From: Leucoraja erinacea
Lineage: Eukaryota
DNA: 64,000 nt
Direction of reading: 5' to 3'
Assembly (NCBI RefSeq): GCF_028641065.1
Contig: NC_073408.1
Location: 14,384,001 to 14,448,000 of the forward strand
Each line of letters begins with the position of its first letter. Within the stretch, counting starts at the first letter, position 1. Under the pieces are notes generated by a model. That model saw only the letters and a list, made by a program, of their open reading frames with translations, had not been told where the DNA came from and did no database searches. The translations under genes were made by a program, and so were the position numbers. Below, one piece after another: positions 1-62,612 of this stretch.

Positions 1-239
1 AAAAAAGCCAATTATTCCCATTATCAGTTTACAAAGCAAAGTGACAAACAAAATCAACTAAATTGTTATACGACTAGTTTTGGCGAGTCGAGACTTTTGG
101 GTGCATGAAAAGTTCTTTATTTTAGAACACAAACAATGAGTCACGCGAGTCGAATAAGACAGCCAAAAATAATGTTGCTTCCACAAGTGTAGACACCAGA
201 CTGGCAGTTACTGACAGTTAAATCAAAAAAACAAACTTC

Positions 240-905
240 CAATAGAACACCCGCTGACGGAGATCCGCCAACACCGCCGGGGTGTCTTCTGGGTGCCCTC
301 GAACCGCATGGAGTAAATCCCCGGGCACGCGCAAAGCCGAGTCGTGGACCAATTCGGCGGACGATGCATCCAAATCTGCCTTGGGGGCCGTGCAAATGCC
401 TAAGAGGACCCAAGGCAACAGGTCTACCCAGTCTGGACTCGTGAACCATGCCTTCAGGGCCGCTTTCAAGTGGCGGTGGAACCACTCCATGAGTCCGTTT
501 GCCTGGGGGTGATAGGCGGTGGAGTGGTGCAACTGTGCCACCACTGGGAGGGCCGGGCGGAACATGGTGTCAGCCAGTACTTCCTGGCCACGTGGGTGCA
601 CCAGCATGGTGGCTCCAGCGAACGCCGCTTTTGCACCCTTGAGGCACTGGAAAAGGGGGCACATGATTCTGGCCGCCGCCAGCATGAAACGGTGGTAGAA
701 GTTTACCATACCGACAAACTCCTATAGGCCTTTCACAGTTGGCAGCCTGGGGAACTGCCGGATGGCCTCCACCTTAGAGGGCAATGGGGTGGCGCCCTGC
801 GAGGTGACGTTGTGGCCCAGGAATGAAATCATGCAGAGTCCAAACTGGCACTTGGCGGGATGACAGAGTAGTGGAGCCGCTGGAAAAGCATCCGCAGGTG
901 TACGA
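240..905 (-). mobile_element. Gypsy/Ty3 LTR retrotransposon pol fragment (RT C-terminus/linker and integrase core), internally deleted and frameshifted
   Basis: ORF 218..709 contains HHSTAYHPQANGLMEWFHRHLKAAL and WVDLLPWVLLGICTAPK (integrase core) plus MVNFYHRF. The adjacent frame gives PAKCQFG...SFLGHNVTSQGATPLPSKVEAIRQFPR (RT thumb). Confidence 0.9.
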
Positions 906-1627
906 GGTGCTCCTGTTGGGAGCGGTTCATGACCAGGATGAGTATAAATGGGGATCCTGTGGATAGGGTGAACTGTTTTAAATATCTGGGAGTCCACATC
1001 TCTGAGGATATGACATGGTCATCACACGCCTCAGCACTGGTGAGTAAGGCAAGGCAGCGCCTTTACCACCTCAGGCAATTGCGGAAATTCAGAGTGTCTC
1101 TGAGGATCCTCCAGTGCTTCTACGCAGCAGCAGTGGAAAGCATCTTGTCCGGGAACATTACAATCTGGTTCGGGAATTGCTCTGCCAAGGACAAGAAGGC
1201 TCTGCAGAGAGTAGTGCGTTCGGCCGAACGCACTATGGGAACTTCACTCACCCCCCTGCAGGAACTATACAACAAGAGGTGCAACTCCAGAGCAAATAAA
1301 ATCATGAGAGACCTCTTCCACCCCTGCAACAGACTGTTCCAGCCGCTGCGGTCAGGCAAACGCCTCCGTTGCCATGCAGTGAGAACGAAGAGGTTGAGAA
1401 GGAGTTTCTTCCCAGAGGCAATTCGGACTGTAAACGCCTTTCTCACCAGGGACTAACTGTACAGAACGTTTTTCCTTCTATTATTTATTACGTAAAATAA
1501 TATGTGTGATTGTGTTTAGAATTTGTTTGGTTGTTTTTGTTGTTCCGCGAGCATTGCCACTTTCATTTCACTGCACATCTCGTATGTGTATGCGACAAAT
1601 AAACTTGACTTGACTTGACTTGACTTG
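906..1627 (+). mobile_element. Rex1/Babar-type LINE, 5'-truncated 3' end, inserted into the Gypsy RT
   Basis: ORF 929..1456: VDRVNCFKYLGVHISEDMTWSSH...KARQRLYHLRQLRKF...SFFPEAIR. Followed by a 3' UTR, AATAAA and a (GACTT)n tail at about 1598-1627. Confidence 0.9.
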
Positions 1628-1935
1628 GATGTCATCGAGGTAAATGTAGATAAAGTTCAATCCCTGACCGACTATGTCCATTAGGCGCCGGAACACCCGA
1701 GCTGCGTTCTTCAAACCGAAGGGCATGCGGAGCCACTCAAACAGCCTGAACGGGGTGATGGTGGCAGTTTTGGGCACGTCTACCGGGCGCACAGGGATCT
1801 GGTGATAACACTGGACCAGGTCCACCTTGCAGAAAAAGATGGTGCCCTCCAGATGGGCCGAAAAGTCCTGTCGATGTGGGACCGGGTAGCAGTCCACGGT
1901 TGTAATGGCGTTCAGGCGCCTGTAATCCCCGCGCC
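1628..1935 (-). mobile_element. Gypsy RT N-terminal part (continuation of 240-905)
   Basis: GDYRRLNAITTVDCYPVPH...KVDLVQCYHQIPV...KTATITPFRLFEWLRMPFGLKNAA...IYIYLDDI. The YLDD motif abuts the LINE tail. Confidence 0.92.
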
Positions 1936-1985
1936 TGCAATTACATGCGTACGCACAGCCGTCTGGAGCGTGTGACATCATTTGA

Positions 1986-2174
1986 AGATGGACACAAAGC
2001 TGGAGTAACTCAGCAGGACCGGCAGCATCTCTGGAGAGAAGCAATGGGTGATGTTTCAGGTCGAGACTCTTCTTCAGTCTGAAAAGAAGGGTCTTGACCC
2101 GAAACGTCACCCATTGCTTCTCTCCAGAGATGCTGCCAGTCCCGCTGAGTTACTCCTGCATTTTCTGTCCATCT
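1986..2174. repeat. Fold-back (inverted) pair of Penelope-derived short repeats
   Basis: agatggacacaaagctggagtaactcagc...cttcttcag and its reverse complement gaagggtcttgacccgaaacgtcacccattgc...ttttctgtccatct, centred at about 2078. Confidence 0.85.
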
Positions 2175-8149: not shown

Positions 8150-9505
8150 GGGCGATCTCACGGTGCGACCTGAAGCAAGACCTAACAAGAGTGTAACATC
8201 GTGGGAACCTTCTGCGATAGCTGTACGGCATTCGTGGACCACCGAGGACCTCCGTGGCGCTGACGGCAGGCAGTCGTGTGACTTGGTAAGGTCGGGAGAA
8301 AATTCAAACATTTTTGAATTTCTCCAAGAGTGTCTTGAGCAGCGTTGCAACATTGTATGAGTGCAGATGCCAGTGCGATATCCTTGCGATATCCGTGCAA
8401 TATCCGTAATGACTCTTACGAGTACCGTGGGAACTCCTGCAAACGGCAAACCCGGAAGCTTGACAGAAGGGGCATAAGGTGAGGTTAAATACATATATTT
8501 TTTACTATCAGATTGATGTCTGCAACTCTTCATTAACACATCACTACAAGAGGAATGTCTCTAATGTTATAATCCCTCTCATGCTGAAACACAAAAATAG
8601 TTGAAGGGAGGTTAAATAATCACATTTTTATTCTTTTTCATTTTTGAGTGTTGCTGAGCGATTGTACTCTCACTTGTTGAGCTATTGTACTCCAGCAGTT
8701 TGTGTCTCTTTTTGTCTGAAAGCAGTTTCTAACTGGAGGAACTCCGTGGGCCAGGCAGCATCTACGGAGGGAAATTGACAGGCGAGCCTTTCCTCAGGCT
8801 GCCTTATCTCTCTCTACCCCCCCCCCCCCCCCTCCTCCCCCCCCTCCCCCCAACTGCCACCCACACACACAAATGCTGGAGAAACTCAGCGGGTGCAGCA
8901 GGATCTATGGAACGAAGGAAATAGGCAACGTTTCGGCCCGAAAAGTTGCCTATTTCTTGTGCATATGTCGGAAGGAACAGCAGATGCCGGTTTAAAGAGA
9001 ATGAGTAACTCGACGGCAGGCAGCATCTTTTGGGAGAAGGAATGGGTGACATTTCGGGTCGAGACCCTTCTGATATGCTGCTTGTCCCGCTGAGCTACAT
9101 GTTGTGTCTATCTTCGTTTTAATCCAGCATCTGCAGATCCCTCCTGGCCGAACCCGATTGAAAGATGAGAGGCTGGGCGATAGAAATCATTAATTGAATT
9201 AAATAACTAGATACCTGTCTAATCGTATCTACAGGATTGTACAGGCTAGATGGAGGAAGAATGTTCCCGATGTTGGGGGAGTCCAGAACCAGGGTCCCAG
9301 TTTTACAGTCTACCATGGGAACTCTTTAATTACAGCGGGAAACCTTCAGTTTCCCAGGGGGTCGGGACGGGACTGGAGTTGGGAGGGAAAGGTGGGGGAG
9401 TCGAGGGAGAGGAGGGGGAGACAGATGGGGGTGTCTTCATTTAGTGGCGGTGGGTGTCTGTCACTGAAACAGGCAGGTGAGATTTCACATTCACCTTGTG
9501 TGTGC

Positions 9506-9536
<31 letters not shown>

Positions 9537-10362
9537 CCTTCCTCTCACACAGGCATGAATGGATGAACTCCACGGGCCAGGCAGCATCTACGGAGGGAAA
9601 TGGACAGGCGACCCATTCTTCAGGCTGCCTTATGTCTCTCTCCCCCCCCCAACTCCCACCCACACACGCGAATGCTGGAGAAACTCAGCGGGTGCAGCAG
9701 CATCTATGGAACAAAGGAAATAGACAACGTTTTGGCCCCGCTGCACCCGCTGATTTTCTCCAGAGAGAGTGTGTGTGTGGGTGGGAGGAGAGAGAGTGTG
9801 TCCAGGTCAGTCCTTTGAAGATCTTGGAGCAACTCAGCGGGACAGGCAGCATCTCTGGAGAGAAGGAACGGGTGGCGTTTCGGGTCAAGAGCCTTCTTCA
9901 GACTGAAAGTTTCACCTCTCAGTAGATCATAAAATAACACAATCATCACGGTCAATGTGAGATACAGTGTTTATTCATATTTGACAAAATAAAAAGACGA
10001 CTTCTTGCACATTGAGAGAAGGTGCATCATACAAAACAACATTTGTCTAAAAAAAGACAGATTATTCTTCAGCTCATTAAAGGGCTCCGGTGAAAAAAAC
10101 CTATAATAGTGTGTGACAACAAAGTAACATCATTTGTGCCACGTGATTAACTACACTACAGACCACGATGTTCATTCACGATTAACGGGAAAGATCGGGA
10201 GACGGACAAGTCACTCGCAAAAATGACAGAATTGCAGAGTACCGTGGGAACTCTTTATCTACCTCCCGCTATATCGTGCGGAACTCTTGCGGAACTCTTA
10301 CTGGACCACGACCACTTCACTCGGGAGAGATCTTGCATCAGGTCGCACCGTGAGATCTAGCC
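8150..10362. mobile_element. TIR DNA transposon (Harbinger-like, non-autonomous) with nested repeats
   Basis: Left end gatctcacggtgcgacctgaagcaaga (about 8154-8180) is the near-perfect reverse complement of right end tcttgcatcaggtcgcaccgtgagatc (about 10331-10357). The subterminal motif gagtaccgtgggaactc occurs at about 8420 and 10237. Confidence 0.65.
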
Positions 10363-12428
10363 ATTATTCAGACAAATACTGTTCTACTTTCAATACCAAA
10401 TCCTATTGATTCAGTTTCTTCTTGTATGCAGGAAGGAAGAGCAGAGTCTGTAAGTCAGATGTGTCGCAGTGTTCGAGGGCATTTGAGCCTCTGGTGGGGC
10501 AGGACACGTGCTGATAGTATCTTGGTAGCTCACAGGTCGGCCTGGTCTAGCCCAAACATTGAAGAACAAGTCCTTAGGGTATTTCGTTTCAAGGCTATTG
10601 GTTGTGGATCACACTACGGTGATTGATTTGCAGAGAACCAGACAAAATATATTCATTTTTTGAATTTGCTTTGACCTGCAACTTTATCACAAAAAATGTA
10701 ATTCCACAGATTTTAAATATTAATGCAAGAGTCTGTTCAGCTTCTGAAGATACATTGATTACATGTTGAGAATGCAACAGGAGTGATTAGATCCCCAAAA
10801 TCTCTATGTACATATTTCCAAGCATCTGTCCCAAGGAACATTACATGCAACACGACATTAGAACTATTCTTAAATTCACCCGTGACAAATGCACAATTCA
10901 CAAGACACAGATACAGACATATACGAAACATGATGTCACAAATGTCGTTGTTACTGTTACAATTGGAATCTGAGATTAAAACGTCACAACCATTATGAAT
11001 TATCCATCACTTATCTCCAGCAAGATGAGATAAGATTATTTCTTCATACTTATTTTCTGATGGTGTAGTGTATAAATAGGCCATCCCCAGCTTAGAACCA
11101 CCATTTGCTGCAACTGGGAATACGATCATTAGACTAGGTACTCCGATTCAATAGTGTGCTTGGAAAATGTTGATTATTTATATGATTCATTTGTATGAAC
11201 TTTTAATTTTAAATAACAATCAGATCGGCACTTCAATGTTATCACATGATTTGATCAGTACAACTGCTGCATGTGAGCAAACTAGCATCCTTTACAGAAG
11301 ATTAGTTTCATCACCATAACTTGCTTGTCCAGCCCCATTCCCAGAGTACCATAGTTATTTGCTCTCACAGTTAGCACAGATACACTTAATCCAAGAGCAA
11401 AAATTACCGAATTTAGTTCACAAAAATATTTTCATTCGTATATTTAGAATGATGGACAGGAAATAATGTCAATTCCAAATTAGAAATGACCTGAATTATT
11501 TTGGTTCTGTACTGTTTGAATAAATGTTAAACAGGTCTGTATACAGGACTTCAAATTTCCTTGTTGTAATTGGATAAATGTGAAGGCCGTAATCGCAGCA
11601 CAATATTGAAGCAGAGAGATGGGGTGATGTCCCTACTTACCCTTCTCCAAACTTGCAATATACCTCTGACTTGTGAGTTCAAAGAGTCAACATTTTTAAT
11701 TTTAATTTTTACCTGCTTTGTTAAAAATAATGAAATTAATTGTACTAATTACAGTTTCATCTTTTAAAACAGAATGTCAAAAGACAAAGTTCGCCTCAAG
11801 GGGAAGTAGGAGAAGTAGTTTACCACAAACTAAATATTGCTGTATTGGCATTGACTGAACCAAAAAACACATTCAGTGGAGAGGCTTGGAAGGACTTTTT
11901 AATGACCAATACCACTAACTATTGTCACTAACCATTGTTTTTGTAATTTGTATTTTTATATCCAGTACTGCATTTGTATATGGCCCTCTGAAGCCTCACA
12001 AAATCAGAACTATTTTAAAAGATATTTTAAATTATTTGATAATGTAAAAATAAATCTATCTCGTTAGTATACAATAAATTTCAAAACACTGTTCGCAGTA
12101 TATGGCTTGTAACTTTAGGTAGTCATGGATGCTTAACAGTTAAATGCACAGAAGCATTACAAATCATAATTCATATCCAGCTGAAATGCCCTCTTATCAC
12201 AATAGACAAAGGAATGTTCAATATATGGCCCAAAATGTCATGCATACAAGCTGAAAGTGTTACGTATTATTGCAACTTTTCAGGATTGTTCCTCAGATGA
12301 CCATAATTGAAATGTTGCTGGAGCACGTTTTGCAAATATCCTCTTTATATTGCACATTACTTGAATGGGAAATGACCTTTCAAGAACTGCAGGTTTTCAG
12401 AACTCGGTATCTCGCAACATTTGCGTTT

Positions 12429-12490
12429 CTACAAGAGGAATGGAAAATTCCAAATGACCACAGCAAGTGGGAGTAGCAGCAAGAACGGAC
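12429..12490 (-). CDS. IgSF gene last coding exon: C-terminal hydrophobic segment (probable GPI-anchor signal) and stop
   Basis: Acceptor cttctattcttttcAG. Phase 1 G|GT then PFLLLLPLAVVIWNFPFLL and TAG. No charged cytoplasmic tail. Confidence 0.82.
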
Positions 12491-12894
12491 CTGAAAAGAA
12501 TAGAAGTTTTGCATGAATTACACAAATTATTTTTCAAAGCATCTAAAGCACGTCAATGATACAAATTGATCTGATGGTCGAATTCTTTACAATTTAATCA
12601 TCATAAGGACAAATTCAATCGTGCATTTTCAGAGGATGAGTTGGGCAATTGATCATTCCTGTTGTATGAGGTGCTTAGAGATTCGGCCTTGTGTTGCAAT
12701 ATTAATCATTTATTTATGTGAAGTGGACATCACTGTTATTCAATGACCACCCCATTTGTCTCTCAGGATCCAGAAATGCTGCCTGCCCAACTGAGTTACT
12801 CCAACATTTTGTGTCTATCTTAGATTTAAATCAGCATCTGCAGTTCTTCCCTACACACTAGAATTATTTCAATCCTTCTCGTGAATGGAATTAC

Positions 12895-13420
12895 ATAGTT
12901 ACATAGACAATAGGTGCAGGAGTAGGCCCTTCAGCCCTTCGAGCCAGAACCACCATTCAATGTGGTTATGGCTGATCATCCACAATTAGTACCCCGTTCC
13001 TGCCTTCTCCCCATATCCCATGATTCAACTAGCCCCAAGAGCTCTATCTAAGTCTCTTTTGAATGCATCCAGTGAATCAGCCCCCACTGCCTTCTGAGGC
13101 AGAGAATTCCACAAATTTACAACTCTCTGGGTGAAAATGTTTTTCCTCATCTCAGTTCTAAATGGCCTACCCCTTATTCTTAAACTGTGGTCCCTGGTTC
13201 TGGACTCCCACTACATCGGGAACACGTTTCCCGCATCTAGCATATGTCCTTCCTCAAATTAGGAGGCCAAATCGGCACACAATACTTCAGGTGTGGTCTC
13301 ACCAGGGTCATGTACAACCGCAGAAGGACCTCTTTGCTCCTTTACTCAACTCCTCTTGTTATAAAGGCCAGCATGCCATTAGCTTTCTTCACTGCCTGCT
13401 GTGTCTGTATGCTTACTTCC
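12895..13420 (-). mobile_element. CR1 (HER1-like) LINE 3' fragment, intronic
   Basis: Reverse complement of the CR1 3' region seen at 46565-47165 (GVE*RSKEVLL..., ctcttggggctag, catagacaataggtgcaggagtaggcc tail). Confidence 0.85.
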
Positions 13421-14698
13421 AAGAAATGATCAGGAATTTCCAGGAATTCAATCTTTGATGATAAAGGCTCTGTGAAATATTTCCAAGTCAAATTGGTGCT
13501 TGACGTAGAATGATAATATCAAACACTAGAGGGCATAGCTCTAACGAGAGGGGCAAAGTTTAAAGGAGATGTGCTGGGCAAGTTGTTTTTGTACACAGAG
13601 GGTAGTGAGAACACACTGCCAATGATGATGATAGATGCAGGTTGCTAGTGGCATTAAAGAGACTTTAGAATAACATCATGGATATGGAGGGATACAGATG
13701 ATGTGCAGGCAGATAAGGGTTGGACTTAGCATTATGTTCAGCACAGACATTGCAGGCTGAAGGGCCTGTTCCTGTGTTCAACTGTTCTATGGAACCACAG
13801 GTGGCAGTGTCCACCATGGCCTGTTGCCCTCATTTTTTGTTTTGTTTGATGAGGTCAAGTGTTGACGCAACCTTGGTGAGGATTGCAGTGCATTTGTGAA
13901 TCGCTTATGTTTCCGTTTTGGTGCATGCCAATAAGCAGGCGGATTTGTCCTGAATATTATTGGACAGGTGGAGCTGTGTTCTGGCAAATGAATGATGTTA
14001 AATCAGAATCTTGACTTGTGGGTTCCAGATGGTGGAAAGTCAAAATATTGGTTAGATTGCAATAAGGGTGTACAGTTCTGGTCAGCATATGGCAGGAAAA
14101 ATGTAATAGCTATAAAGCACGCACAGGATTCATTAGCATTGCTTGGAACCGAGTTATGTTGGTATATGGACGGATTAGATAGGCTGGGTTTATTATTACT
14201 GAAATTATCACATGAGGTTGAGACATGACCTTAATAACAATTATCAATTATCAGAGGCACATATATACGATAGATAATCGGAAAATTTAACCCAGTGGAG
14301 CCCACAACTAGAGGGCACAGGTTTACGGTGAAAACTTTAAAGGAGATCTGAGGGGAAAGTTTTTTTACAGTAGTGCTGAAAATATGGAAGAGCTGCCAGG
14401 ACATGTAATGGAGATGGATGCAATTACAATGTTGAAAAGGCGTTTGGACAGAGGAAACATATGAAGGAATATGAGCCTAATGCAGGCAAATGGGGTTAGC
14501 CAAGCAACATGGTTGGTGTGGACGGGGTAGGCTGGAAGGGCCAACATCTGTGCTGTATCTTTATACAATTCCACAATACCATGAGAGGAGGCGAGAGTTC
14601 TGGAGTTGAATTACATCAAAGTAATTTGTAATTTCCCACATTCAACAATGCTTTTTGTTTTGCGTGTTGAATGATTAGCTAAGCCCTTACATTCATAC

Positions 14699-14743
14699 CT
14701 GCTGTTGTACAAATGCCATGTGAACCAGGTAACATTCTGCTGC
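14699..14743 (-). CDS. IgSF gene 45-nt stalk exon
   Basis: Acceptor cttctattttattacAG, donor CAG|GTATGA. Phase 1-1, open frame (G)SRMLPGSHGICTTA(G). Confidence 0.75.
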
Positions 14744-15140
14744 CTGTAATAAAATAGAAGACATCAATCAGACAAGAATACTTGAAAGACATCAGTTGAA
14801 TTTCCAAAATACCAGTTCAGATTTCATAGAGGGAACATCGAAGTATGAAACACATTATTTATGTTGGCAGAAAAGTCCATCACAGCCCTTGCTGAGCAAA
14901 AATTGTGCTATTCAATTGCCTTGAGCTTTTTGAAGATATGAAATCTGTTTCAATCCAGTGCAATTGGCAGTGTTTTTGCTTTTCAAAATATCCTTTATTT
15001 GCAGAATGATTATATAATATTTTTTAATTGATTCAGCTGAAAATAGATTGGGCAGATAGCTGGAAATACATGTAGGTGGTGGATAAATCAGTTGTCTTAA
15101 AATGGACACAAGATGCTAGCGTAACTCAGCATTTCTACGG

Positions 15141-15300
15141 ATGCCGTTTGGGTTACAGAACGCAGGGCAATCGTTCCAGCGTTACATGGACCACGTACTC
15201 TCCGGCCTCGATTCAGTCTACGCATACATCAATGACATGTTGGTAGCGAGCTCCAGCGAAGAAGAACACAAGAAACACCTCGGATTATTGTTTCGGCGTC
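15141..15300 (+). mobile_element. Gypsy RT core fragment
   Basis: MPFGLQNAGQSFQRYMDHVLSGLDSVYAYINDMLVASSSEEEHKKHLGLLFRRL. Confidence 0.88.
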
Positions 15301-15423
15301 TCAAACTTGAACATTGTGCAATCACGAGCACCGATACGCACTCGCAACCTACTGACGGAAGGAAGGTCGTTGATGAAAATGCTGATGATGATTGGGCTCA
15401 GGGCATCTTCTTGAGGATCCAAT
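15301..15423 (-). mobile_element. CR1/L2-clade LINE RT fragment
   Basis: [36 protein letters not shown] is a degenerate PQGSVLGP..F..FINDLP...FADD motif. Confidence 0.7.
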
Positions 15424-16440
15424 GGAGCGTTTTGGCACCGGCACGATGGAAGTGGTTTTAAGGCACGTGGGGACAACTGCTTGGGCAAGTGACAGGTTGA
15501 AGATGTCAGTCCAGACGTCTGTCAGCTGTGCAGCACAGGCCCCGAGGACGTGCCCGGGGATGCCGTCAGGGCCAGCAGCCTTACGTGCATTAGTCCTACT
15601 CAGTGCCAGATACACGTCGTAGGGGGTGAGTGTGAGGGGTTGGTGGTCAGCAGGGAGCACAGCCTTGATGGCTGTCTCTAGATTGTCCTTGTCGAAGCGG
15701 CCATAGAAGTGGTTAAGCTCCTCAAGGAAGGAGGCATCGCTGGATGTGGGGGTGATGTTGGTGGGTCTATAGTCTGTGATGGCCTGGATGCCTTGCCACA
15801 TGCGTCGGGAGTCGGGGTTGTTGTTGAAGTGCTCCTCAATCCTGAGCTTATGGCAGTGCTTGGCCTTCCTGATGCCCCTCTTCAGGTTATCCCTGGATGA
15901 ACTGTAGGCTCGAGCATCGCCTGACCTGAAAGCGGTGTCCCGTGCTTTCAGCAGTAGTCTACCTCGCTGTTCATCCATGGCTTCTGATTCGGGAACATGG
16001 TCACCTGTTTGAGGGAGGTGACACTATTGATGGTGGAGTTTATAAAGTCCAGAACAGAGCATGTGTAGGAATCAATGTCTGTGTGGGAGTCAAGGGTGGC
16101 CTGGGCTGCAAACGCCTTCCAGTCAGTGTTTCCAAAACACTGCTGAAGTGTGGAGTCCGCTTCCTCTGACCAGACTTTAACTGTCCTCACAGTGGGTTTA
16201 ACCCGTCTGATGAGTGGGGAGTACCTAGGGAGCAGGAACAATGAGAGGTGATCAGACTGATCAAGGTGGGGGAGGGGGACGGCTTTGTAAGCTTCAGCCA
16301 TGTTAGTGTCGACTTTGTCCAGTGTCTTGCCTACTCTACTGGCGAAGGAGACATGTTGGTGGAGTTTGGGGAGTACAGTCTTCAGGTTGGAGTGATTGAA
16401 GTCACCCGCAACAATGAAGGCTGCCTCGGGGTTGTGTTTT
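15424..16440 (-). mobile_element. Rex1/Babar-type LINE internal fragment (end of APE domain to RT start)
   Basis: [87 protein letters not shown]. Confidence 0.9.
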
Positions 16441-18829
16441 CATTCTGGGTCGGAGTGGAAAAATCTTTCTGGGCAGCAGAGGTTTTTGTGCCAAATCATT
16501 AACATGCATCTAAACTAAATCTGCAGAAGAATCACAATATTACTCCCTAGTTCTAGCGCCTCAGAAGTTGCAAGGAGACCTGATACGGTATATAAAATTA
16601 TGAGGCACAGAAAGGGTAGACAGTCAGGACCGTTTTCCTCAGAGTGTAAACATTAAAGCCAGTGGGCATTGTTTTAAAGTGAGTGGGACAAAGTTTAAAG
16701 ATGTGCAGGGTGAGAGGGCATCTCATCTGCCTCCAGTATTTTTTAACATCAGAAATGCAATCTCAAACAATTATTTGAATTTTGCTGACTGTGGTAGTGG
16801 GACTCATGTGCTTTACTTGATCCAGTCAGCACTGATGACTCCTCTCCGCACTGGGAAGTTTACGCAATGAGCCCCCTCCTTTTACCACATTGATTTCCAG
16901 CTGTTAAAATAGAATGTGAAATATAAACCCTGCTTTATATGGCTGACTAAATGAACTGTTTTCAAGAGTGCATTTTCACAAACTGAAACTGTATTATAGG
17001 AATTTAAATTTAAAAGAAACAGGAAGGCAGACAGATTTCAGTTTCCAAAAACTTCCTCAATTTAACTTTACAAAATCTACAAAAGCTAGTCAAACTAAAA
17101 CCCTTTCAAAACAATTAGGCTTTGGACTGATCTCTTGCAAATTAGGATGGTTTAAATTAAAAATGAATATACTGGATGCCAACTATGATTAGTAGTTATG
17201 AGTTAATGGAATAATTATTTCTCAGTTGCTTTTTGTTTGAAAAAATATGAATAGCAAGAAGCAAGTAGGGCAAAACATTTGTTTTGTGGCAAATTAGTAA
17301 TGCAAATGTTCTATTTATCATGATCCTAACAAGTACTTCCTGCATTTTTCTGGAGGTTAGAGTTATATTCTGTTTTTTACTATCTCTCTCAATTACCACC
17401 ATGCAAGGGGTATGAAGAAGGGTCTCAACCCGAAATGTCACCTATTCCTTTTCCCCAGGCATGTTGCTTGACCCGCTGAGTCACTGTAACATTTTGTGTC
17501 TATCTTTGGTGTAAACCAGCATCTGCTACATGTTCCATCCTGCATGTATGGTTATGGGATTTGGTGTGTGGGGAGGAATATAAACTTTCAGATATTATGA
17601 AGATTCACTTCCAATTTGGAACTGTAGGTGAATCTTCACGAGTGTGATACAGGCCAAATTTTGACAATAGGCCACAGCGTTTGAAATTGTCACTTGGAGA
17701 AGAAATATCAGCTCTTGATATTAATAGTAGTGTAATAAGGCTTCACCATACATTTCATCTGATCTAGTGCAGAGTGTAAAATGAGACATAAAAAAATAGA
17801 ACAGTTCAGCACATTGGCCCACAATGTCCATTTTTCAAGAGAGTTTGATTTAGCCCTTAGGGCTAAAGGAATTAAGGGATAAGGGGGAAAAAGCAGGAAC
17901 ATGGTACTGATTTTGGATGATCAGCTTTGATCATATTGAATGGCAGTGATAGCTCAAAGGGCCGAATGGCCTATTCCAGCACCTATTTTCTATGTTTCAA
18001 TGTTTTTATGTATCCATGCCAAGTTAAATTAATCTCCTCTACGTCCACATGATCCATGCCCCGCATATCCATATCCCTAGCTAACAGCCTCTTAAACGCC
18101 ACAATTATATTTGCCTCCACCACCACCCATGGCAGCACATTAGAGACACCCAACACTCTGTGTTAAAACACTTGCCCCATGCTTCTCTTTTATTTCTTGC
18201 CCCACTCACAGCACTATGCTCTCCAGGCTTTGAAATTTCCACTGAAAAAATGTTCTGGCTGTCTACCCGAGCAAGGCTTTTCACAAATGTATACACTTCT
18301 ATCTGGTGCCCCCTCAACCTCCAACACTCCAGGGAAATCAATTCAAGTCTGTCCACCCTCTCTCCCACACTCTAATCCAGGCAGAAAATTTGCACTTTAG
18401 GCAAATCAATCTGAAACACAACTACAAAGTACACAATTGCACAGAGATGTTGGTGTTATAAATAACTTAAGGATTATACACTGAACAACAAAGAAAAGTG
18501 TCCACTTTGGACCGGTGGCCATTTAAATGGTGGTGAGATAGAAATGCTACCTCAGAAAAATGTTTAATTGTAGATATAAAGCAGGTGATGTTCTCTGCAT
18601 ATTTACTTAAGATGACTTTCTGACACAAAGATCAAGGAAGTAAACCGTAAATATCACCTCCCCTCCCCCCCTGTGGTCTCACTGACTGTAAGTCACAGAT
18701 TCACATGAATATCAGCTGATTTCTATTTGAATTTCACGAGAAACATCCTTCCGTAAACAAAGTTCAGTGTATTATATTTAACTGTAATCACTCACTCTTT
18801 TGGCTGCTGCAGATTTTTTTTTTAACTGG

Positions 18830-19590
18830 GCGAAGCTGTTAGAGCTGCCGGAGAGCTGGGTTCAATCACGACTTGGGTAACGTTAGTGTGGAGCTTACAC
18901 ACTCTCCCCGTGACCGTGTGGGTTTAATCCGGTTGGGTTTCCCCCTTGTGTGTAGGCAGTGGATGAGAAAGTGGAATAACATGGAACTATTGGGATAACA
19001 TAGAACATATATGGGCTCTATCTGTGGAAAGATGTGCTGCCACTGGAAAGGGTCCAGAGGTGGATTTCGAGAATGATCCCTGGAATGATTGGGTCAACAT
19101 GTGATCAGTGTTTGATGGTAGTGGGCCTGTACAAGCTGGAGTTTAGATGAATGGGAACCTCATTGAAACTTAGCCAACAGTGAAAAGCCTGGATAGAGTG
19201 GATGTAGAGAGGATGTTTCCACTAGTGGTAGAGTTTGCATAACCTTTGAAAGGAGACGAGGAGGAATTTCTTCAGTCAGTGTATGGTGAATCGATGGAAT
19301 TTATCACCACAGAAGGCTGTGCAGGCCACCAATGGACATTTTGAAGGTGGAAATTGACAGATTGTTGATTAATACGGGAGTCAGGAGTTATGGAGAGAAG
19401 GCAGGAGAATGGGGTTGAGAGGGAAAGATAGATCATCCATGATTGAATGGCAGAGTAAGCTTGATGGGCCGAATGGCCTAATTCTGCTCCTACAACTGAT
19501 GAACTTATGAACTAGTGTGATCGGGTGATCGATCGTCGGCATAGACTCGGTGGGCTAAAGGACCTGTTGCCATGCTGTACCTCTAAACAG
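18830..19590 (+). mobile_element. V-SINE interrupted by a CR1 3' fragment (about 19015-19505)
   Basis: SINE head (gggttcaatc B-box-like, ctctccccgtgaccgtgtgggttt) and SINE tail (gactcggtgggctaaaggacctgttgccatgctgtacctctaaac) flank CR1 sequence. Confidence 0.7.
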
Positions 19591-19914
19591 CTGTGTAAGA
19601 ATGTGTCAGCTAAAATTAAACTAAACGTCCTTACAATACAGAGGACTTCCAGCCCATCAAGTCAATAGCAGCTAGCAATCCTGTTGGTTCCATTTCCTCT
19701 ACTTGTCCCCTGCAATCTGTTCTCTCTCAGATGCGTTTTCCCTCCTCACTGCTACTACTACTTCCCCCCTACACCAGCAGAAATATATGGTGGCCAATTG
19801 ACTCTCCAGCTCATATTTGAGCTGCCCAGAAAACAGAAGCACTTGGGGAAAGTCCATACAGTGAGAGATTGAAATGCCACAGAGTTGGTGCCAGAGATTA
19901 GACTCTTGAGTACA

Positions 19915-20465
19915 ACAGCCTGGAATTCATGATGCAGCTTTGTATGACTTTAGTTAGGCCACATTTGGAGTATAGAATGTAGTTTTAGTTGCTCCAATAC
20001 AAGGATGTGGAGGGTTTTGAAGGTTTACCTGAACGATGCCTGGATTAGACAGTATTAGCTACAGGGGACTCGGATTGGACAAACTTGGATTGTTTTCTCT
20101 GGAACACCGGAGGTTGCGGGGGGAACTAACAGAAGTATATAAAATTATGAGAGGCATAGATCAGGAAGACAGTCAGAACCTCCCCCCCCCCCCCCCCACC
20201 TCACCAGGGTGGAAATGCACACTAGAGGCCATAGCTATAAAGTTACACATAGCGCATAACAATACAGCTAGAAATCTTTTTCCCAAGATCGAAAAGTCAA
20301 ATACTAGAGAACGCATCTTTATGGTGAGAGGGGAAAAGTTTAAAGGAGATGTGTGGGGCGCGTTTTTTGTCTTTACACAGAGGGTGGTGAGTGCCTGGAG
20401 TGCACTGCTGGGATTTGTGGTTGAGGCAGATGTTCGTTAATGGCATTTAATAGACTTTTGGATAT
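19915..20465 (+). mobile_element. CR1 LINE 3' fragment
   Basis: MPGLDSISY...LDKLGLFSLEHRRLRGELTEVYKIMRGID; FTQRVVSAWSAL. Confidence 0.85.
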
Positions 20466-20663
20466 GGCAACAAATTGGTCTGCAACTGAGGAAACATCAG
20501 CACAAACTTTTCAGTCCTGGAATCCAGCTATACTCCAGCCAATGCATAGATGACACATGAAATTGATTTACTGCCACATATAAATCCCAACTTATGAATT
20601 GATTTTGTCATAATATTTGACTTGAAAGTACCTTAAAGCCACACCAATTTTTAAAACACCCAC

Positions 20664-20969
20664 CTTGTGTTACAAGCAAGCTAACTTTGCATTCAAAAGT
20701 GTTATCTTTTGTGTACAAGTAGGCAGTATAATTTCCAGAATCTGAGTATTTCACTTCTATAACAGTTAAGGTAATTTCTTCTTTGTCTACGTGAAGTTGA
20801 AATCCAGTACACCTTGGTTCGGGTTCCTCGTTTAAATTCTCATAGCAAATTGTTTCAGCTTTTTTCTGCCAGTATGCAATATAACTTTTATCTGTGATCT
20901 TTAATGAGTGTGGACACTTCAGCGATCCCGGTCTGCCGGCTATCAGGGTGACTTTTAAATCTTTAATGC
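20664..20969 (-). CDS. IgSF gene immunoglobulin V-set domain exon (306 nt)
   Basis: Acceptor ttttgtatttgtttttaaacAG, donor AAG|GTGGGT. Phase 1-1, stop-free: (S)IKDLKVTLIAGRPGSLKCPHSLKITDKSYIAYWQKKAETICYENLNEEPEPRCTGFQLHVDKEEITLTVIEVKYSDSGNYTAYLYTKDNTFECKVSLLVTQ. It has the B-strand Cys, C-strand Trp, E-strand LTV and the D-x-G-x-Y motif. Confidence 0.92.
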
Positions 20970-21031
20970 CTGTTTAAAAACAAATACAAAAAGAAAACAT
21001 TCAGCATTTTGAAAACACCCATATTTAATCT

Positions 21032-21165
21032 CAGTCTGAAGAAGGGTTTCGACCCGAAACATTGCCTATTTCCTTCGCTCCATAGATGCTGCCTCAGCCG
21101 CTGAGTTTCTGCAGTATTTTTGTCTACCTTCGATTTTCCAGCATCTGCAGTTCTTTCTTAAACAT
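21032..21165 (+). repeat. Penelope-derived short repeat with hammerhead-like core
   Basis: cagtCTGAAGAagggtttcgacccGAAAcATTgcc followed by the family tail (atagatgctgcc...cagcatctgcagttc). Confidence 0.8.
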
Positions 21166-23574
21166 ATTTCATTTATGTCTTGACCTAAGCAACTAATGTA
21201 TAAGGAATGAAAGTTGGAATTTTATGTCCATCAGTTATTATTAGCCCAAATCTGGAAGTAAAAAATTGTGCTTTGGGCAGGTGCAAAATGTATGCACCCA
21301 ATTCCTGTTTCATCCGACCAATTAGAAACATGGAGCAGCATTTCTTGCTGTGTTCAGCTAAGATGGATTTGAGTTCTCACATGCTTTAGAAAAACTGGGT
21401 TGTGAAGTCACTTTGTGCAACTAAGATGAGACAGGAGAAATAATCCAAGCAATTCTTGTGCAAAGCAATCATGGACAAAACTATGTCTCCAGTACAGCAA
21501 TGTTTTAGTGTGTGCTTTCACTTATCATACAATTTAGACCACATGAGGTCAAATTCTGTGACATCAAATCATGTAATTGAATTGATTAAGGTATGTTAAT
21601 TGTGGCTGGTCACACGCTGACCTTCAGTCACTTTAATCAAATGCTCAGCAATTTCTAGAGGGTTGTAAACTAAAAGAACCGGGTAGGCCAGGAAAAAGCT
21701 AGCCAGCGAGAGCAAGCAGAGAGGGAGAGGGAGAGAGGGATGAGGAGGAGAGTGACAAGAGAGCTTGGGGGAATGATAGAAGGTGAGAAGTGAGAGATGG
21801 CACAAGGAAGGATGCAAAAAGGGTGAGAGAGATAGATCAGCCAGACAACAGAGGAGCTGGGTTTTGTCGGGAAAAAGTTATAATTAGAACTAGATTCAAG
21901 TCAACCACATACTGAAATATAAACCCATTTAAATTTTTGAATGTGCGCCAATGGAACTGAATTACTGGAGCACAGTTCCTTGCAAATATGTTATTGCCAA
22001 ATTGTGCCGACATTTATTCCTGGAAAAATCTTTGACAGTTTCCAGTGCTGAGCCTGCGTCATTTTGTTGGACTTCACTCTGCATTGAACATGGTATAAAA
22101 TAGTTTGGATGGAACTGTGTGAAAATAGAACTGGAAGTAATCCATTCTCCCACTTACGCCAAACACAACAATGAAGTTTAAAATAATTTAACTTCAACAG
22201 ATTGGGATAGAAAACTGCCCTCTCTTTTACATGTAAAATGTGCAAACAGGAACATATTTGCAAAGAACTCCGCTCCAATAATTCTGTTCCTTTGACTTAC
22301 ATTTCAAATTTCTACTCAATTATTTATAAATATTTTGCAATATTCTGAATGTTCTTCTGTTCCCACAAATAGCAAATTAAATAAATGAATTGCCTGTTGG
22401 TAAGTGTAACCAAGTTCCCATCATTTAAATAGTTTGTAAACCGAGCATATTCCAGGAACCCAACAAATGCAAAGTTCTCCCTTTGAAACCCAAAATAGAA
22501 GTGTTGTGTTTTCCGTATATATCTCCTGAGAATTTTTTTTAAATTATACCATAATAGCCTCCTTCATTTAGCAATAACAAATAATAATTTTCTACAATAT
22601 CAAATAAAGTTACATTAACATCTTGCACTGAAATAACCCATTTGCAACTATAATTACATTGTTATCCAACGTACTATTTCTCATAATTATAAAAAAATAA
22701 TTCTACCCAAATATACAGGGACAGATTCACAACAAGAAAATATTAAATTGCATTGACGCAGATGATGTTGTGGGCACAGAAACTATCTCATCGGAATACT
22801 CCTCTTCATTGCATCAATAGCATTGGATCACAATGGGTGCCAGTGAGGTAGGATTTTGTGTTTACAGCTGCCCTACTGTGGCCTTCCACACATCTTAAAA
22901 CAATTTCACTGCTCATTTGAAATCCTGCAATTGCTCCAAAGCTGGAAAATTTAGTACCCAGTTTGTTCCCAACATCAAAGAGCAATTTAATCTGTTGTCA
23001 TGGTGCAGGTTCAGTGATTCAGAGCTGAAATCTAGCATCTCGTGCACTGAAGCGCTAATTTAGATAATACAAGGAGGGTAATTCCAAACCATGGTAACTG
23101 ACCAGAGGCAAGCCAAGCTGCCGCACTGCTATGGAAACATTAGATATCGTTTGTGTTGCTTCCTCATTTAGTGGATTATTTATAAATAAGGATTTAACTA
23201 GAATCTTGACACAGCAAAGATACGTTGAGTAAGTAAGCAGCCAGCCTCATAACTGAGGAAATACACAAAATGCTTGAATAACTCAGCAAATCAGGCAGAT
23301 TCCCTGGAGAACATGGATAGGCGATGAGTCGGAAGAAGGGTCTCAACCCAAAAGGGCACTTGTCTATGTTCTCCATGGCCATTGCCTGACCCGCTGAGTT
23401 AATCCAGCATTGTGTGCCTTTCCTTGGTAAACCAGCATCTGTGGTATCTTGTATCTGTGGCCTCATAACTATATTGATCGGAAATGATTACCTGTGACTG
23501 TAGGTACAACAACTTAAACTAAGAATATTTATCTGTCCACTTTGTTCCATCAGTTGCATCAATTCAATACTTAC

Positions 23575-23641
23575 TCTCAGAATTTACTTCCAGTATGAAT
23601 GTTAATAAGATAACGTGGATGATACTTGGTAATCCACCCAT
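23575..23641 (-). CDS. IgSF gene first coding exon: signal peptide
   Basis: Exon 23653-23575 with acceptor ccctttctttgcAG, start context gaaATGG and donor GA|GTAAGT. Encodes MGGLPSIIHVILLTFILEVNSE plus 1 nt (phase 1, compatible with the IgV exon). Confidence 0.88.
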
Positions 23642-24039
23642 TTCTGTGGAAATCTGCAAAGAAAGGGAATGGTTAAACAATGAAAGAATGCATCCTTGCC
23701 ATTCTATATTCTGTAACACAGTGGCTGAAAATCAACAATGTGGGAACAATGGGTAGGAAGGAACTGCAGATGCTGGTTTAAACTGTAGATAGACACAAAA
23801 TGCTTGAGTAACTCAGCGGGACAGGCAGCATCTCTGAATAGAAGAAATGGGTAACATTTCAGGTCGAGACCCTTCTTCAGACTGAATCAGAGTAGAAGGA
23901 GATATAGAGATAAGGAAGTATAAAATGAGACAAAGGTGATATCAAGGGTCTCTTTTCTACATTTCTTAATCTCTGTCTCATTTTCATACCTTGCACTTCC
24001 TTATCTCTGTATGCCCCTCTCCCCTTATGTCTCTGGTAC

Positions 24040-41258: not shown

Positions 41259-41987
41259 TTTAAGAGGGAACTGCAGATGCTGGAGAATCGAAGGTTACAC
41301 AGAAAAGCTGGAGAAACTCAGCGGGTGCAGCAGCATCTATGGAGCGAAGGAAATAGGCAACGTTTCGGGCCGAAACCCTTCTTCAGACTGATCGGGGGGG
41401 GGGGTGGGTGGGGACAAGAAAGGGAAAAGGAGGAGTAGCCAGAAGGCTGGAGGGTGGGAGGAGACAGCAGGGGAGCTGAGGAAGGGGAGGAGACAGCAAG
41501 GACTAACAGAATTGGGAGAATTCGATGTTCATGCCCCGGGGGTGTAGACTCCCCAAACGGAATATGAGGTGCTGTTCCTCCAATTTCCGGTGCTGCTCGC
41601 TGTGGCCATGGAGGAGACCCAGGACAGAGAGGTCGGAGGCGGAGTGGGAGGGGGAGTTGAAGTGCTGAGCCACCGGGAGGTCAGCTTGGTTATTGTGGAC
41701 CGAGCGGAGGTGTTCGGCGAAACGATCGCCCAACCTCCGCTTGGTCTCACCGATATAGATCTGCTGGCATCTAGAGCAGTGGACGCAATAGATGAGGTTG
41801 GAAGAGATGCAGGTAAACCTCTGTCGCACCTGGAACGACTGCTTGGGTCCTCTATACTACTGTTTAAGAAGGAACTGCAGATGCTGGAGAATCGAAGGTT
41901 ACACAAAAAAGCTGGAGAAACTCAGCGGGTGCAGCAGCATCTATGGAGCGAAGGAAATAGGCAATGTTTCGGGCCGAAACCCTTCTT
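41259..41987 (-). mobile_element. Penelope-like element (GIY-YIG endonuclease 3' portion plus pLTR tail) with tandem second tail copy
   Basis: ORF 41503..41829: SNLIYCVHCSRCQQIYIGETKRRLGDRFAEH...PVAQHFN...RKLEEQHLIFRLGSLHPRGMNIEF. Direct repeats at about 41259-41386 and 41865-41987. Confidence 0.92.
41356..41390 (-). ncRNA. Minimal type I hammerhead ribozyme motif (Penelope pLTR)
   Basis: Minus strand reads cagu-CUGAAGA-a-GGGU-UUCG-GCCC-GAAA-C-GUU-gcc: conserved core, stem II with UUCG loop, palindromic ACGU stem III and an NUH site. Confidence 0.75.
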
Positions 41988-62066: not shown

Positions 62067-62612
62067 ACACAAAAATGCTGGAGAAACACAGCGGGTGCAG
62101 CAGCATCTATGGAGCGAAGGAAATAGGCGACGTTTCGGGCCGAAACCCTTCTTCAGACTGATGGGGGGTGCGGGGGAGAAGGAAGGAAAAGGGGAGGAGG
62201 AGGAGCCCGAGGGCGGGCGGATGGGAGGGTGGGAGGAGACAGCTAGGGGGTTAAGGAAGGGGAGGAGACAGCAAGGGCTAGCAAAATTGGGAGAATTCAA
62301 TGTTAATGCCATCCGGACGCAAGGTCCCCAGGCGGAATATGAGGTGCTGTTCCTCCAATTTCCGCTGTTGCTCACTCTGGCAGTGGAGGAGACCCAGGAC
62401 AGAGAGGTCGGATTGGGAATGGGAGGGGGAGTTGAAGTGCTGAGCCACCGGGAGGTCAGGTTGGTTATTGCGGACTGAGCGGAGGTGTTCGGCGAAACGA
62501 TCGCCCAACCTACGCTTAGTCTCCCCGATGTAAATCAGCTGACACCTAGAGCAGTGGATGCAGTAGATGAGGTTGGAGGAGATGTAGGTGAACCTTTGTC
62601 GCACCTGGAACT
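62067..62612 (-). mobile_element. Penelope-like element 3' portion (GIY-YIG domain plus hammerhead-bearing tail)
   Basis: ORF 62278..62652: SNLIYCIHCSRCQLIYIGETKRRLGDRFAEH...GINIEFSQFC. TSD aatctccttaataggt at 62051-62066 and 62621-62636. Confidence 0.92.
62126..62160 (-). ncRNA. Minimal type I hammerhead ribozyme motif (Penelope pLTR)
   Basis: Minus strand reads cagu-CUGAAGA-a-GGGU-UUCG-GCCC-GAAA-C-GUC-gcc, with the canonical GUC cleavage triplet. Confidence 0.78.

What the first reader, a model, noticed from the sequence alone, without database searches (positions are those of the whole stretch)
12429..23641. Spliced gene invisible to the ORF track: 159-aa single-IgV, probably GPI-anchored surface protein with B7/CD80-like motifs
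Seen: four exons with canonical splice sites, all introns phase 1, join into a stop-free 480-nt CDS: MGGLPSIIHVILLTFILEVNSESIKDLKVTLIAGRPGSLKCPHSLKITDKSYIAYWQKKAETICYENLNEEPEPRCTGFQLHVDKEEITLTVIEVKYSDSGNYTAYLYTKDNTFECKVSLLVTQGSRMLPGSHGICTTAGPFLLLLPLAVVIWNFPFLL*. Established: leader/V/stalk phase-1 exon modularity is typical of IgSF genes, and small residues (G131-S132-H-G) followed by a spacer and a terminal hydrophobic run fit a GPI signal. LxCxH and YWQK recall the CD80 IgV domain (LSCGH, IYWQK), while the single-V plus GPI architecture recalls Thy-1 or CD160. I cannot assign it to any of these. Inference: a lineage-specific or uncharacterised immune or adhesion ligand of cartilaginous fish.
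Basis: partly seen in the sequence, partly recalled or inferred. Interest (0 to 1): 0.85.

Follow-up and report, generated by a model that had tools for sequence, protein, structure and literature searches.

The report
Small lipid-anchored Ig surface protein gene

Summary
Four minus-strand exons (23641-23575, 20969-20664, 14743-14699, 12490-12429) have GT..AG borders and phase-1 introns, and add up to 480 nt. RNA reads cover exon 4 and a 2.5-kb 3'UTR continuously, from the minus strand, down to an AATAAA at 9975-9970.

Homologues were found only in elasmobranchs: a second skate and two sharks, all labelled 'uncharacterized' or 'hypothetical'. They share the same plan: leader, one V domain, short stalk and a hydrophobic C-terminus with no charged residues.

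The V domain folds confidently (pLDDT 89). CD2, CD47, 2B4/CD48, LAG-3 and B7 V domains match it equally well (Z 12-13.4), so the B7/CD80 motifs are not diagnostic. A language-model search puts the whole protein next to Thy-1, but the V domain alone does not go there, so that likeness is architectural.

A GPI anchor is likely but untested. This is a new member of a known kind, of moderate interest. The same exon was also noted elsewhere in this scan (s1-876394).

The parts
23575..23641 (-). Exon 1, coding part: ATG at 23641, signal peptide (22 codons plus 1 base). Likely cleavage after V19-N20-S21.
   Evidence: Identical to P0001 residues 1-22. The hydrophobic core 7-17 has mean Kyte-Doolittle 2.95.
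23642..23653 (-). Twelve untranslated bases before the ATG, preceded by an acceptor-like ctttctttgcag. Possibly the 3' end of an intron that follows an untranslated first exon.
   Evidence: Sequence only. Inference, not tested with reads. Rhinoraja has two transcript records for one protein.
20664..20969 (-). Exon 2: the whole V-type Ig domain (residues 23-125), with Cys41, Trp56, Cys64, Cys76, Ala105 in place of the usual F-strand Cys, and Cys116.
   Evidence: Pfam V-set E 3.7e-5, 24.3 bits. AlphaFold2 V-only model pLDDT 89, strands A B C C' (C'') D E F G. VIA Z up to 13.4.
20749..20781 (-). Codons 65-75 (coordinates computed from the exon frame): the acidic loop between Cys64 and Cys76 at the tip of the C'-C'' hairpin, hypervariable among the related sequences.
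   Evidence: Six to seven of the 9-10 differences in P0006 and P0007 fall in these 11 residues (Fisher p 4e-6 and 3e-8). The loop also differs by indels in Rhinoraja.
14699..14743 (-). Exon 3: a 45-nt stalk exon (residues 125-140) that holds the candidate GPI attachment site S132 (S-H-G) and Cys136.
   Evidence: Identical in P0001. It forms an island of read depth between two zero-depth introns (bin 14600-14799 against 13800-14599).
12429..12490 (-). Exon 4, coding part: a 19-residue hydrophobic C-terminus with no charged residue, then TAG at 12431-12429.
   Evidence: Mean Kyte-Doolittle 2.13. The tails of the shark homologues align to it.
9950..12428 (-). 3'UTR of about 2.5 kb, with the polyadenylation signal AATAAA at 9975-9970. 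The 3' end near 9950 is approximate.
   Evidence: Continuous RNA-seq depth over 10000-12599 in X18 and X22. In X22 the first mates lie on the + strand only, so the RNA is from the minus strand. AATAAA read. The implied mRNA of about 3.0 kb matches the contig lengths of 2766-3121 nt.
14744..20663 (-). Intron 2 (5.9 kb), filled with retroelement remains.
   Evidence: RVT_1 at 15120-15458. Zero unique read depth next to E3. No further match to the family's proteins.

Best explanation
Its 159-residue precursor has a cleavable signal peptide, one V-type Ig domain, a roughly 10-residue stalk and a C-terminal GPI-attachment signal.

Proposed steps, all inferred:
1. The leader is cut after S21.
2. GPI transamidase cuts at about S132 and removes the last 27 residues, including Cys136.
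3. A mature glycoprotein of about 110 residues, with one N-glycan site at N102, sits on the outer leaflet of the membrane by its lipid anchor.
4. With no cytoplasmic part, it acts as a ligand or adhesion and recognition molecule through the GFCC'C'' face of the V domain. Any signalling goes through partners in cis, as for Thy-1, CD48 and CD160.

The domain is held by a Cys64-Cys76 staple across the C'-C'' hairpin. In skates and Mustelus it probably also has a Cys41-Cys116 (B-to-G strand) bridge in place of the canonical B-F bridge, which Chiloscyllium still has. The loop inside the Cys64-Cys76 staple and the V domain as a whole change fast, while leader and tail barely change. That suggests selection by a binding partner.

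Shown: the exons, the splicing, the transcription and its strand, the V fold, and the restriction of detectable homologues to elasmobranchs. Inferred: the GPI anchoring, the disulfide pairing and the function.
For: - Gene model. The transcript-derived P0001 is identical over 159 aa and comes from contigs of at most 3.1 kb.
- Transcription: continuous, minus-strand RNA coverage of exon 4 plus the 3'UTR, an island at exon 3 and empty introns; poly(A) signal.
- Conserved plan in Rhinoraja, Chiloscyllium and Mustelus isoform X1, including the hydrophobic tail.
- Invariant C41, W56, C64, C76 and G134.
- V fold.
- GPI-type end: S132-H-G, a 6-7-residue spacer, then an 18-19-residue uncharged hydrophobic end.
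- The full-length protein sits beside Thy-1 clusters in the ESM Atlas (0.95-0.96), but the V domain alone does not. So the termini are what look Thy-1-like.
- Uneven divergence between the two skates: 33 of 104 V-domain positions differ against 1 of 34 in stalk plus tail. The differences are also enriched in the 65-75 loop.
- In the V-only model, F is 78-85 and G is 90-100 (exon-2 numbering), which puts Cys116 opposite Ala105 in the F-G hairpin (my reading of the register).
Against: - No GPI predictor and no experiment were available. The omega site in Mustelus X1 is not obvious at the aligned position (L-N-G).
- The tail is far better conserved between the two skates than a disposable signal usually is. 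It could therefore do more than direct GPI attachment.
- Model coordinates could not be read, so the Cys41-Cys116 distance was not measured.
- The exon 3/exon 4 joint was not among the 15 joints listed, because repeat noise filled the table. That junction rests on P0001 and the depth profile.
- Tissue and cell type are unknown because the runs are coded.
- No binding partner is known.
Confidence: 0.68

Rival explanations
1. It is the strongly diverged elasmobranch orthologue of Thy-1 (CD90), not a separate family.
For: The three best ESM Atlas clusters for the full-length protein are Thy-1 (0.95-0.96, 190-194 shared features, lengths 149-161 aa). The overall plan and size are the same. From my own knowledge, the mammalian THY1 gene has a similar layout: an untranslated first exon, a leader exon, one V exon, and a last exon with the GPI signal and a long 3'UTR.
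Against: The Thy-1 likeness disappears when the V domain is searched alone. phmmer of the V exon against 1.8 billion representatives gave 12 hits at E<=1e-3; apart from the family's own three, all were proteins of 382-2450 aa, far longer than Thy-1. The family profile found nothing beyond its own four clusters. The Thy-1 cysteine pattern as I know it (an A-strand Cys bonded to the C-terminal Cys, plus the B-F pair) is absent: there is no A-strand Cys, Ala sits at the F position, and there is an extra C64-C76 pair. NCBI did not name the homologues Thy-1-like. The stalk is a separate 45-nt exon.
Confidence: 0.12
2. It is a remnant of a two-domain costimulatory or adhesion gene (B7 family, or CD2/SLAM family such as CD48 and CD58) that lost its C-type domain and transmembrane exons and kept the V domain on a GPI tail.
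For: The best structural matches are exactly these families: CD2 Z 13.4, 2B4 12.9, CD48 12.4, B7-H3 13.0, B7-H6 12.9, CD80 and CD86 12.4-12.6, PD-L1 12.9. From my own knowledge, CD2-family V domains also lack the canonical disulfide, and CD48 and one CD58 isoform are GPI-anchored.
Against: All these rows are tied within 1 Z with CD47, LAG-3 D1, CAR, BARF1 and titin, so no family stands out. Sequence identity is 11-19% in the listed rows. No sequence search recovers B7 or CD2-family proteins ahead of generic Ig domains. No IgC-like exon lies in the introns or elsewhere in the 64-kb window.
Confidence: 0.1
3. The hydrophobic C-terminus is not a GPI signal. Either the protein stays in the membrane as a type I protein without a cytoplasmic tail, or it is mainly secreted.
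For: The tail is nearly invariant between the two skates (1 change in 34 positions), which is unusual for a cleaved propeptide. Mustelus has an annotated isoform X2 of 138 aa that lacks the tail and would be secreted.
Against: The segment is 19 residues long, has three prolines, has no flanking basic residue and runs to the very C-terminus. It is preceded by small residues at the right distance (S-H-G plus a 6-7-residue spacer). From established knowledge this is the usual GPI signal layout and a poor stop-transfer anchor. The full-length protein groups with GPI-anchored Thy-1.
Confidence: 0.1

Closest known systems
Thy-1 (CD90)
   Same: About 160-aa precursor with a leader, one V-type Ig domain and a GPI signal, encoded mainly by one V exon with a long 3'UTR. 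The nearest clusters for the full-length protein in the ESM Atlas.
   Different: No detectable sequence relationship of the V domain. Different cysteine pattern: no A-strand Cys and no F-strand Cys, but an added C64-C76 staple and a G-strand Cys. The C-strand Trp is present here. The stalk is a separate micro-exon.
CD160
   Same: A single Ig domain on a GPI anchor with extra cysteines in the C'-side loops (from my own knowledge). A ligand or receptor with no cytoplasmic tail of its own.
   Different: CD160 is not among the 50 listed rows of any fold search and not in any sequence hit list. Relationship untested beyond that.
CD2/SLAM family (CD2, CD48, CD58, 2B4)
   Same: Top-tier structural matches: CD2 Z 13.4 at rmsd 2.1 over 94 residues, 2B4 12.9, CD48 12.4. 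V domains without the canonical B-F disulfide. CD48 is GPI-anchored. These proteins bind through the GFCC'C'' face.
   Different: Those proteins have a second (C2) domain, and none is encoded here. Identity is only 16-19%. The match is tied with unrelated V domains.
B7 family (CD80, CD86, PD-L1, B7-H3, B7-H6)
   Same: V domains match at Z 12.4-13.0. CD80 is a weak profile hit at E 1.6e-3.
   Different: B7 proteins are V plus C ectodomains with a transmembrane segment and a tail, and they keep the B-F disulfide. The LxCxH and YWQK motifs are not conserved in this family's own homologues.
Uncharacterized elasmobranch proteins: LOC144608712 (Rhinoraja longicauda), chiPu_0001670 (Chiloscyllium punctatum), LOC144479844 (Mustelus asterias)
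   Same: True homologues, 34-79% identical over the full length, with the same length, exon-level plan and tail.
   Different: Chiloscyllium keeps the F-strand Cys and lacks the G-strand Cys. Mustelus also has a tail-less isoform. The loop between C64 and C76 differs in length and sequence.

Membership tests
Immunoglobulin superfamily, V-set domain | Match to the V-set profile and a V-type beta sandwich | tested here: met
   PF07686 E 3.7e-5, 24.3 bits, just under the 26-bit cut-off. The Chiloscyllium homologue carries PF07686. The model has pLDDT 89 with strands A B C C' D E F G plus a 2-residue C'' bridge. Z 12-13.4 to many V domains.
Immunoglobulin superfamily, V-set domain | Canonical B-strand to F-strand disulfide and the C-strand Trp | tested here: inconclusive
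   Trp56 and Cys41 are invariant. The F-strand position is Ala105 here, Gly in Rhinoraja and Ser in Mustelus, with Cys116 on the G strand instead. Chiloscyllium has the F-strand Cys and no G-strand Cys. The pairing was not measured.
GPI-anchored proteins | N-terminal signal peptide | tested here: met
   Hydrophobic core 7-17 (mean Kyte-Doolittle 2.95) and V-N-S at -3 to -1. By inspection only; no SignalP.
GPI-anchored proteins | C-terminal signal: small omega to omega+2 residues, a spacer of 5-10 residues, and an uncharged hydrophobic end of 15-20 residues with nothing after it | tested here: met
   S132-H133-G134, spacer 135-140, hydrophobic 141-159 (mean Kyte-Doolittle 2.13, no D/E/K/R). Rule of thumb only; NetGPI and PredGPI were not available.
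GPI-anchored proteins | Release by PI-PLC, or lipid anchor shown chemically | not testable with these tools
   Needs an experiment.
B7 family | IgV plus IgC ectodomain, transmembrane segment and cytoplasmic tail | tested here: not met
   The transcript-derived proteins are 157-159 aa with one Ig domain. No further Ig exon lies in the window.
B7 family | Sequence or structural similarity specific to B7 V domains | tested here: not met
   CD80 scores E 1.6e-3, behind titin, IgLON, pIgR, LRIG1 and CD4. B7 rows are tied with CD2, CD47, 2B4 and LAG-3.
Thy-1 | Detectable sequence homology of the V domain | tested here: not met
   phmmer of the V exon over 1.8 billion representatives found, beyond the family itself, only proteins of 382-2450 aa, none of Thy-1 size. 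The family profile found only its own four clusters. The Atlas search with the V domain alone gives no Thy-1 cluster.
Thy-1 | Cysteine pattern: A-strand Cys bonded to the C-terminal (omega) Cys, plus the B-F pair (from my own knowledge) | tested here: not met
   Cysteines are at 41, 64, 76, 116 and 136. None is in the A strand and none at the F position.
Thy-1 | Conserved gene neighbourhood | not testable with these tools
CD2/SLAM family | V domain followed by a C2 domain | tested here: not met
   No second Ig domain in the transcripts or the window. The V-domain similarity is only a tie.

The most novel reading that the evidence does not exclude
An elasmobranch-only family of GPI-anchored single-V proteins in which the core disulfide has moved sideways from the F to the G strand, a state also seen in V domains of a hagfish multi-V protein. 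A disulfide-stapled C'-C'' loop (the CDR2 position) is hypervariable and varies in length between close relatives. On this reading the protein is a polymorphic recognition ligand, or a decoy, caught in an arms race with a paired receptor or a pathogen.
Probability: 0.18. Interest if true: 0.6.

Novelty: new member of a known kind. Interest (0 to 1): 0.4.

Why it matters
It shows that a reader without tools can recover a correct spliced gene from raw vertebrate sequence. The model matched the transcript-derived protein residue for residue.

Biologically, it adds a small, well-expressed surface protein family restricted to sharks and rays to the list of unassigned Ig-superfamily genes at the base of the jawed vertebrates. 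Three features would give comparative immunologists a concrete target:
- a Thy-1-like build without Thy-1 sequence;
- a core cysteine that sits on the F strand in one shark and on the G strand in skates and another shark;
- a fast-changing loop.

None of this changes a general principle. The homologues in related species are already in NCBI annotation as uncharacterized proteins.

Tried and rejected
- **B7/CD80 kinship:** rejected as a specific claim.
- **Thy-1 orthology:** considered because, then weakened by the V-only control, by the sequence searches and by the cysteine pattern.
- **Paralogues or further Ig, transmembrane or alternative tail exons in the window:** none found by tblastn with five family proteins (P0001, P0002, P0010, P0012, P0021) and two variant sequences (P0006, P0007), or by six-frame reading.
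- **First AlphaFold2 model of the whole precursor:** poor (pLDDT 54), so its Foldseek list was not used. The V-only model replaced it.
- **Read laying:** the exon 3/exon 4 joint was not among the 15 joints printed, because repeats at 9000-9900 and 12600-13400 filled the tables.
- **The look-up of encoding contigs:** No synteny test was possible.
- **Literature:** five searches for Thy-1 or GPI-anchored Ig proteins in cartilaginous fish found nothing relevant.
- **tRNA and Rfam scans of the window:** empty.
- **Joined CDS:** Searches used exon 2 by reference or the database protein P0001, which equals the joined model. Exons 1, 3 and 4 are too short to search alone.

Full report
**The observation**

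I read the four stretches on the minus strand and translated each exon by reference in its own frame.
- Exon 1 runs from the ATG at 23641 to 23575 (67 nt). Its start context is good and its donor is AGA|GTAAGT.
- Exon 2 is 20969-20664 (306 nt). It follows a long pyrimidine tract and CAG, and ends AAG|GTGGGT.
- Exon 3 is 14743-14699 (45 nt), donor CAG|GTATGA.
- Exon 4 starts at 12490 after TTTTCAG and ends with TAG at 12431-12429.
- The lengths add to 480 nt, and each intron splits a codon after its first base.

Whole-protein work used a database protein that turned out to equal the joined model.

**Evidence that the gene is real**

The 101 in-frame codons of exon 2 were searched against 5.8 billion proteins. 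The search returned P0001, a 159-aa protein 100% identical over the exon. P0001 and seven near-identical variants come only from Logan assemblies of public sequencing runs. They lie on 27 contigs, most of them 2.8-3.1 kb long. The exons span 11.2 kb of genome, so these contigs can only be spliced cDNA.

Reads laid on 9000-14999 gave the following.
- In an oligo-dT RNA library (X18, about 5% of the run read), depth is continuous at roughly 20-50 from 10000 to 12599.
- Depth is zero from 13800 to 14599.
- There is a small island in the bin that holds the 45-nt exon 3.
- In a stranded cDNA library (X22), first mates lie on the + strand only across 10400-12599. In most stranded libraries that means the RNA comes from the minus strand. 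There is no antisense signal.
- The exon 3/exon 4 joint itself was not among the 15 joints printed, because expressed repeats at 9000-9900 and 12600-13400 dominated the tables.

An AATAAA sits at 9975-9970. This gives a 3'UTR of about 2.5 kb and an mRNA of about 3.0 kb, which matches the contig lengths. Twelve bases upstream of the ATG there is an acceptor-like ctttctttgcag, so an untranslated upstream exon is likely but untested.

**Relatives**

Three kinds of search found only four clusters:
- a word-indexed search with exon 2;
- an exhaustive phmmer run over 1.8 billion representatives;
- two profile searches with the family alignment.

The clusters are this skate, Rhinoraja longicauda LOC144608712 (156 aa), Chiloscyllium punctatum chiPu_0001670 (156 aa) and Mustelus asterias LOC144479844 (isoform X1 of 159 aa, X2 of 138 aa). 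Their sources call them 'uncharacterized' or 'hypothetical'; UniRef names the Chiloscyllium one only as an immunoglobulin domain-containing protein. They share the whole plan: leader, V domain, short stalk and a hydrophobic end. The shark tails align to exon 4 of the window. Mustelus X2 lacks the tail and would be secreted. None has a second Ig domain or a cytoplasmic part. Nothing outside the elasmobranchs scored better than generic Ig-domain matches.

**The domain**

- Pfam V-set matches at E 3.7e-5 (24.3 bits, just under the cut-off).
- The full precursor folded poorly (pLDDT 54).
- Exon 2 alone, with a 12-row alignment, folded well (pLDDT 89, pTM 0.80). Its strands are A, B, C, C', a two-residue C'' bridge, D, E, F and G.
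- Foldseek and two VIA-align runs gave a flat top: CD2 13.4, CD47 13.0-13.3, B7-H3 13.0, LAG-3 D1 12.9, PD-L1 12.9, 2B4 12.9, B7-H6 12.9, CD80 and CD86 12.4-12.6, CD48 12.4. The listed rows have rmsd of about 2-3 Å and 10-24% identity. Rows within 1 Z count as tied.

The domain is therefore a cell-surface adhesion or costimulatory type of V domain, and no family can be named from structure. The profile search of PDB sequences agrees: titin, IgLON, pIgR and CD4 come before CD80, which scores E 1.6e-3.

**Cysteines**

Cys41 (B strand), Cys64 (C') and Cys76 (C'') are invariant. The usual F-strand Cys is Ala105 here, Gly in Rhinoraja and Ser in Mustelus. All three have Cys116 on the G strand. Chiloscyllium has the F-strand Cys and no G-strand Cys. 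In the model the F-G hairpin (78-85 and 90-100 in exon-2 numbering) puts residue 93 (Cys116) opposite residue 82 (Ala105). A sideways move of the core cysteine is therefore geometrically plausible. I could not read coordinates, so this is inference. Cys136 in the stalk would be removed if the omega site is S132.

The same exon was noted separately in this scan for its 'rewired disulfide' (s1-876394). My data agree with that note and add the comparison among the homologues.

A hagfish protein of 691 aa with repeated V domains (P0011) shares the D-to-G half of the domain. That includes the missing F-strand Cys and a Cys at the G-strand position.

**The tail and the Thy-1 question**

The last 19 residues are hydrophobic (mean Kyte-Doolittle 2.13), contain three prolines and no charged residue, and end the protein. 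Upstream lie S132-H-G and a spacer of 6-7 residues. By the usual rules this is a GPI signal with S132 as the best omega site. No predictor was available.

The ESM Atlas places the full protein beside three Thy-1 clusters (0.95-0.96). As a control I searched residues 23-125 alone. Thy-1 vanished, and generic V-set clusters (CD200R1-like, TIGIT, PD-1) took its place. The Thy-1 likeness therefore lies in the build (leader, one V domain, GPI-type end) and not in the domain. Together with the different cysteine pattern and the lack of any sequence hit, this argues against orthology, although only synteny could settle it. Synteny was out of reach. The window contains no other recognisable gene, only reverse-transcriptase and GIY-YIG remains of retroelements.

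**Pattern of change**

Between the two skates, differences are spread as follows:

| Region | Positions that differ |
|---|---|
| V domain | 33 of 104 |
| Leader | 2 of 21 |
| Stalk plus tail | 1 of 34 |

Among the transcript-derived variants, P0006 and P0007 differ from P0001 at 9-10 positions. Six to seven of these, including a two-residue deletion, fall in the 11-residue loop between Cys64 and Cys76 (Fisher p 4e-6 and 3e-8). I cannot tell whether these variants are alleles, paralogues or sister species. A fast-changing loop at the CDR2 position, beside the face that CD2, B7 and PD-1 family members use for binding, points to selection by a partner. This is suggestive only.

**Verdict**

The gene model is confirmed. 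The protein is best read as a GPI-anchored single-V surface glycoprotein of a small family seen only in sharks and rays. It is built like Thy-1 or CD160 but is not demonstrably a member of either, nor of the B7 or CD2 families. Function is inferred: a tail-less ligand or adhesion molecule that acts through its V face. It is a new member of a known kind, and the homologues in related species are already annotated automatically as uncharacterized. Interest is moderate.

Noticed in passing
window 20664-20969 (-), compared with P0011 (Myxine glutinosa, 691 aa): A hagfish protein with repeated V domains shares the D-to-G half of this V domain, including no F-strand Cys and a Cys at the G-strand position (BLASTP 34% over 65 aa; hhalign probability 87%). 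The F-to-G cysteine shift may be old, or it may have arisen twice.
   Followed up: partly
window 20749-20781 (-), codons 65-75: The acidic loop closed by Cys64 and Cys76 differs by substitutions and a 2-4-residue indel among transcript-derived variants (P0006, P0007) and Rhinoraja, while the leader and tail are almost invariant. It is unknown whether the variants are alleles, paralogues or other species.
   Followed up: partly
window 23642-23665 (-): An acceptor-like ctttctttgcag lies 12 nt before the ATG, which suggests an untranslated upstream exon. The transcription start was not located.
   Followed up: no
window 221-2149, 15120-16439, 41506-41856, 45688-46158, 62281-62688: The rest of the window is mostly retroelement debris. 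Pfam RVT_1 matches at 1571-2149 (-), 15120-15458 (+) and 45688-46158 (+). A GIY-YIG match just under Pfam's cut-off (21.7 vs 22.6 bits), probably Penelope-like, lies at 62281-62688 (-). A short repeat that translates as ...LDPKRHP...LSRDAA.PAELLQ... recurs many times. There are no tRNA or Rfam hits.
   Followed up: partly
window 9000-9900 and 12600-13400: Very high RNA read and contig depth with many chimeric joints and loose ends. These are expressed dispersed repeats, inside intron 3 and just beyond the 3'UTR, and not part of this gene's signal.
   Followed up: no
P0012 and P0021 (Mustelus asterias LOC144479844): Two annotated isoforms differ after the V domain: X1 has the hydrophobic tail, X2 ends without it. 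This hints at a secreted form. No counterpart exon was found in the skate window.
   Followed up: partly
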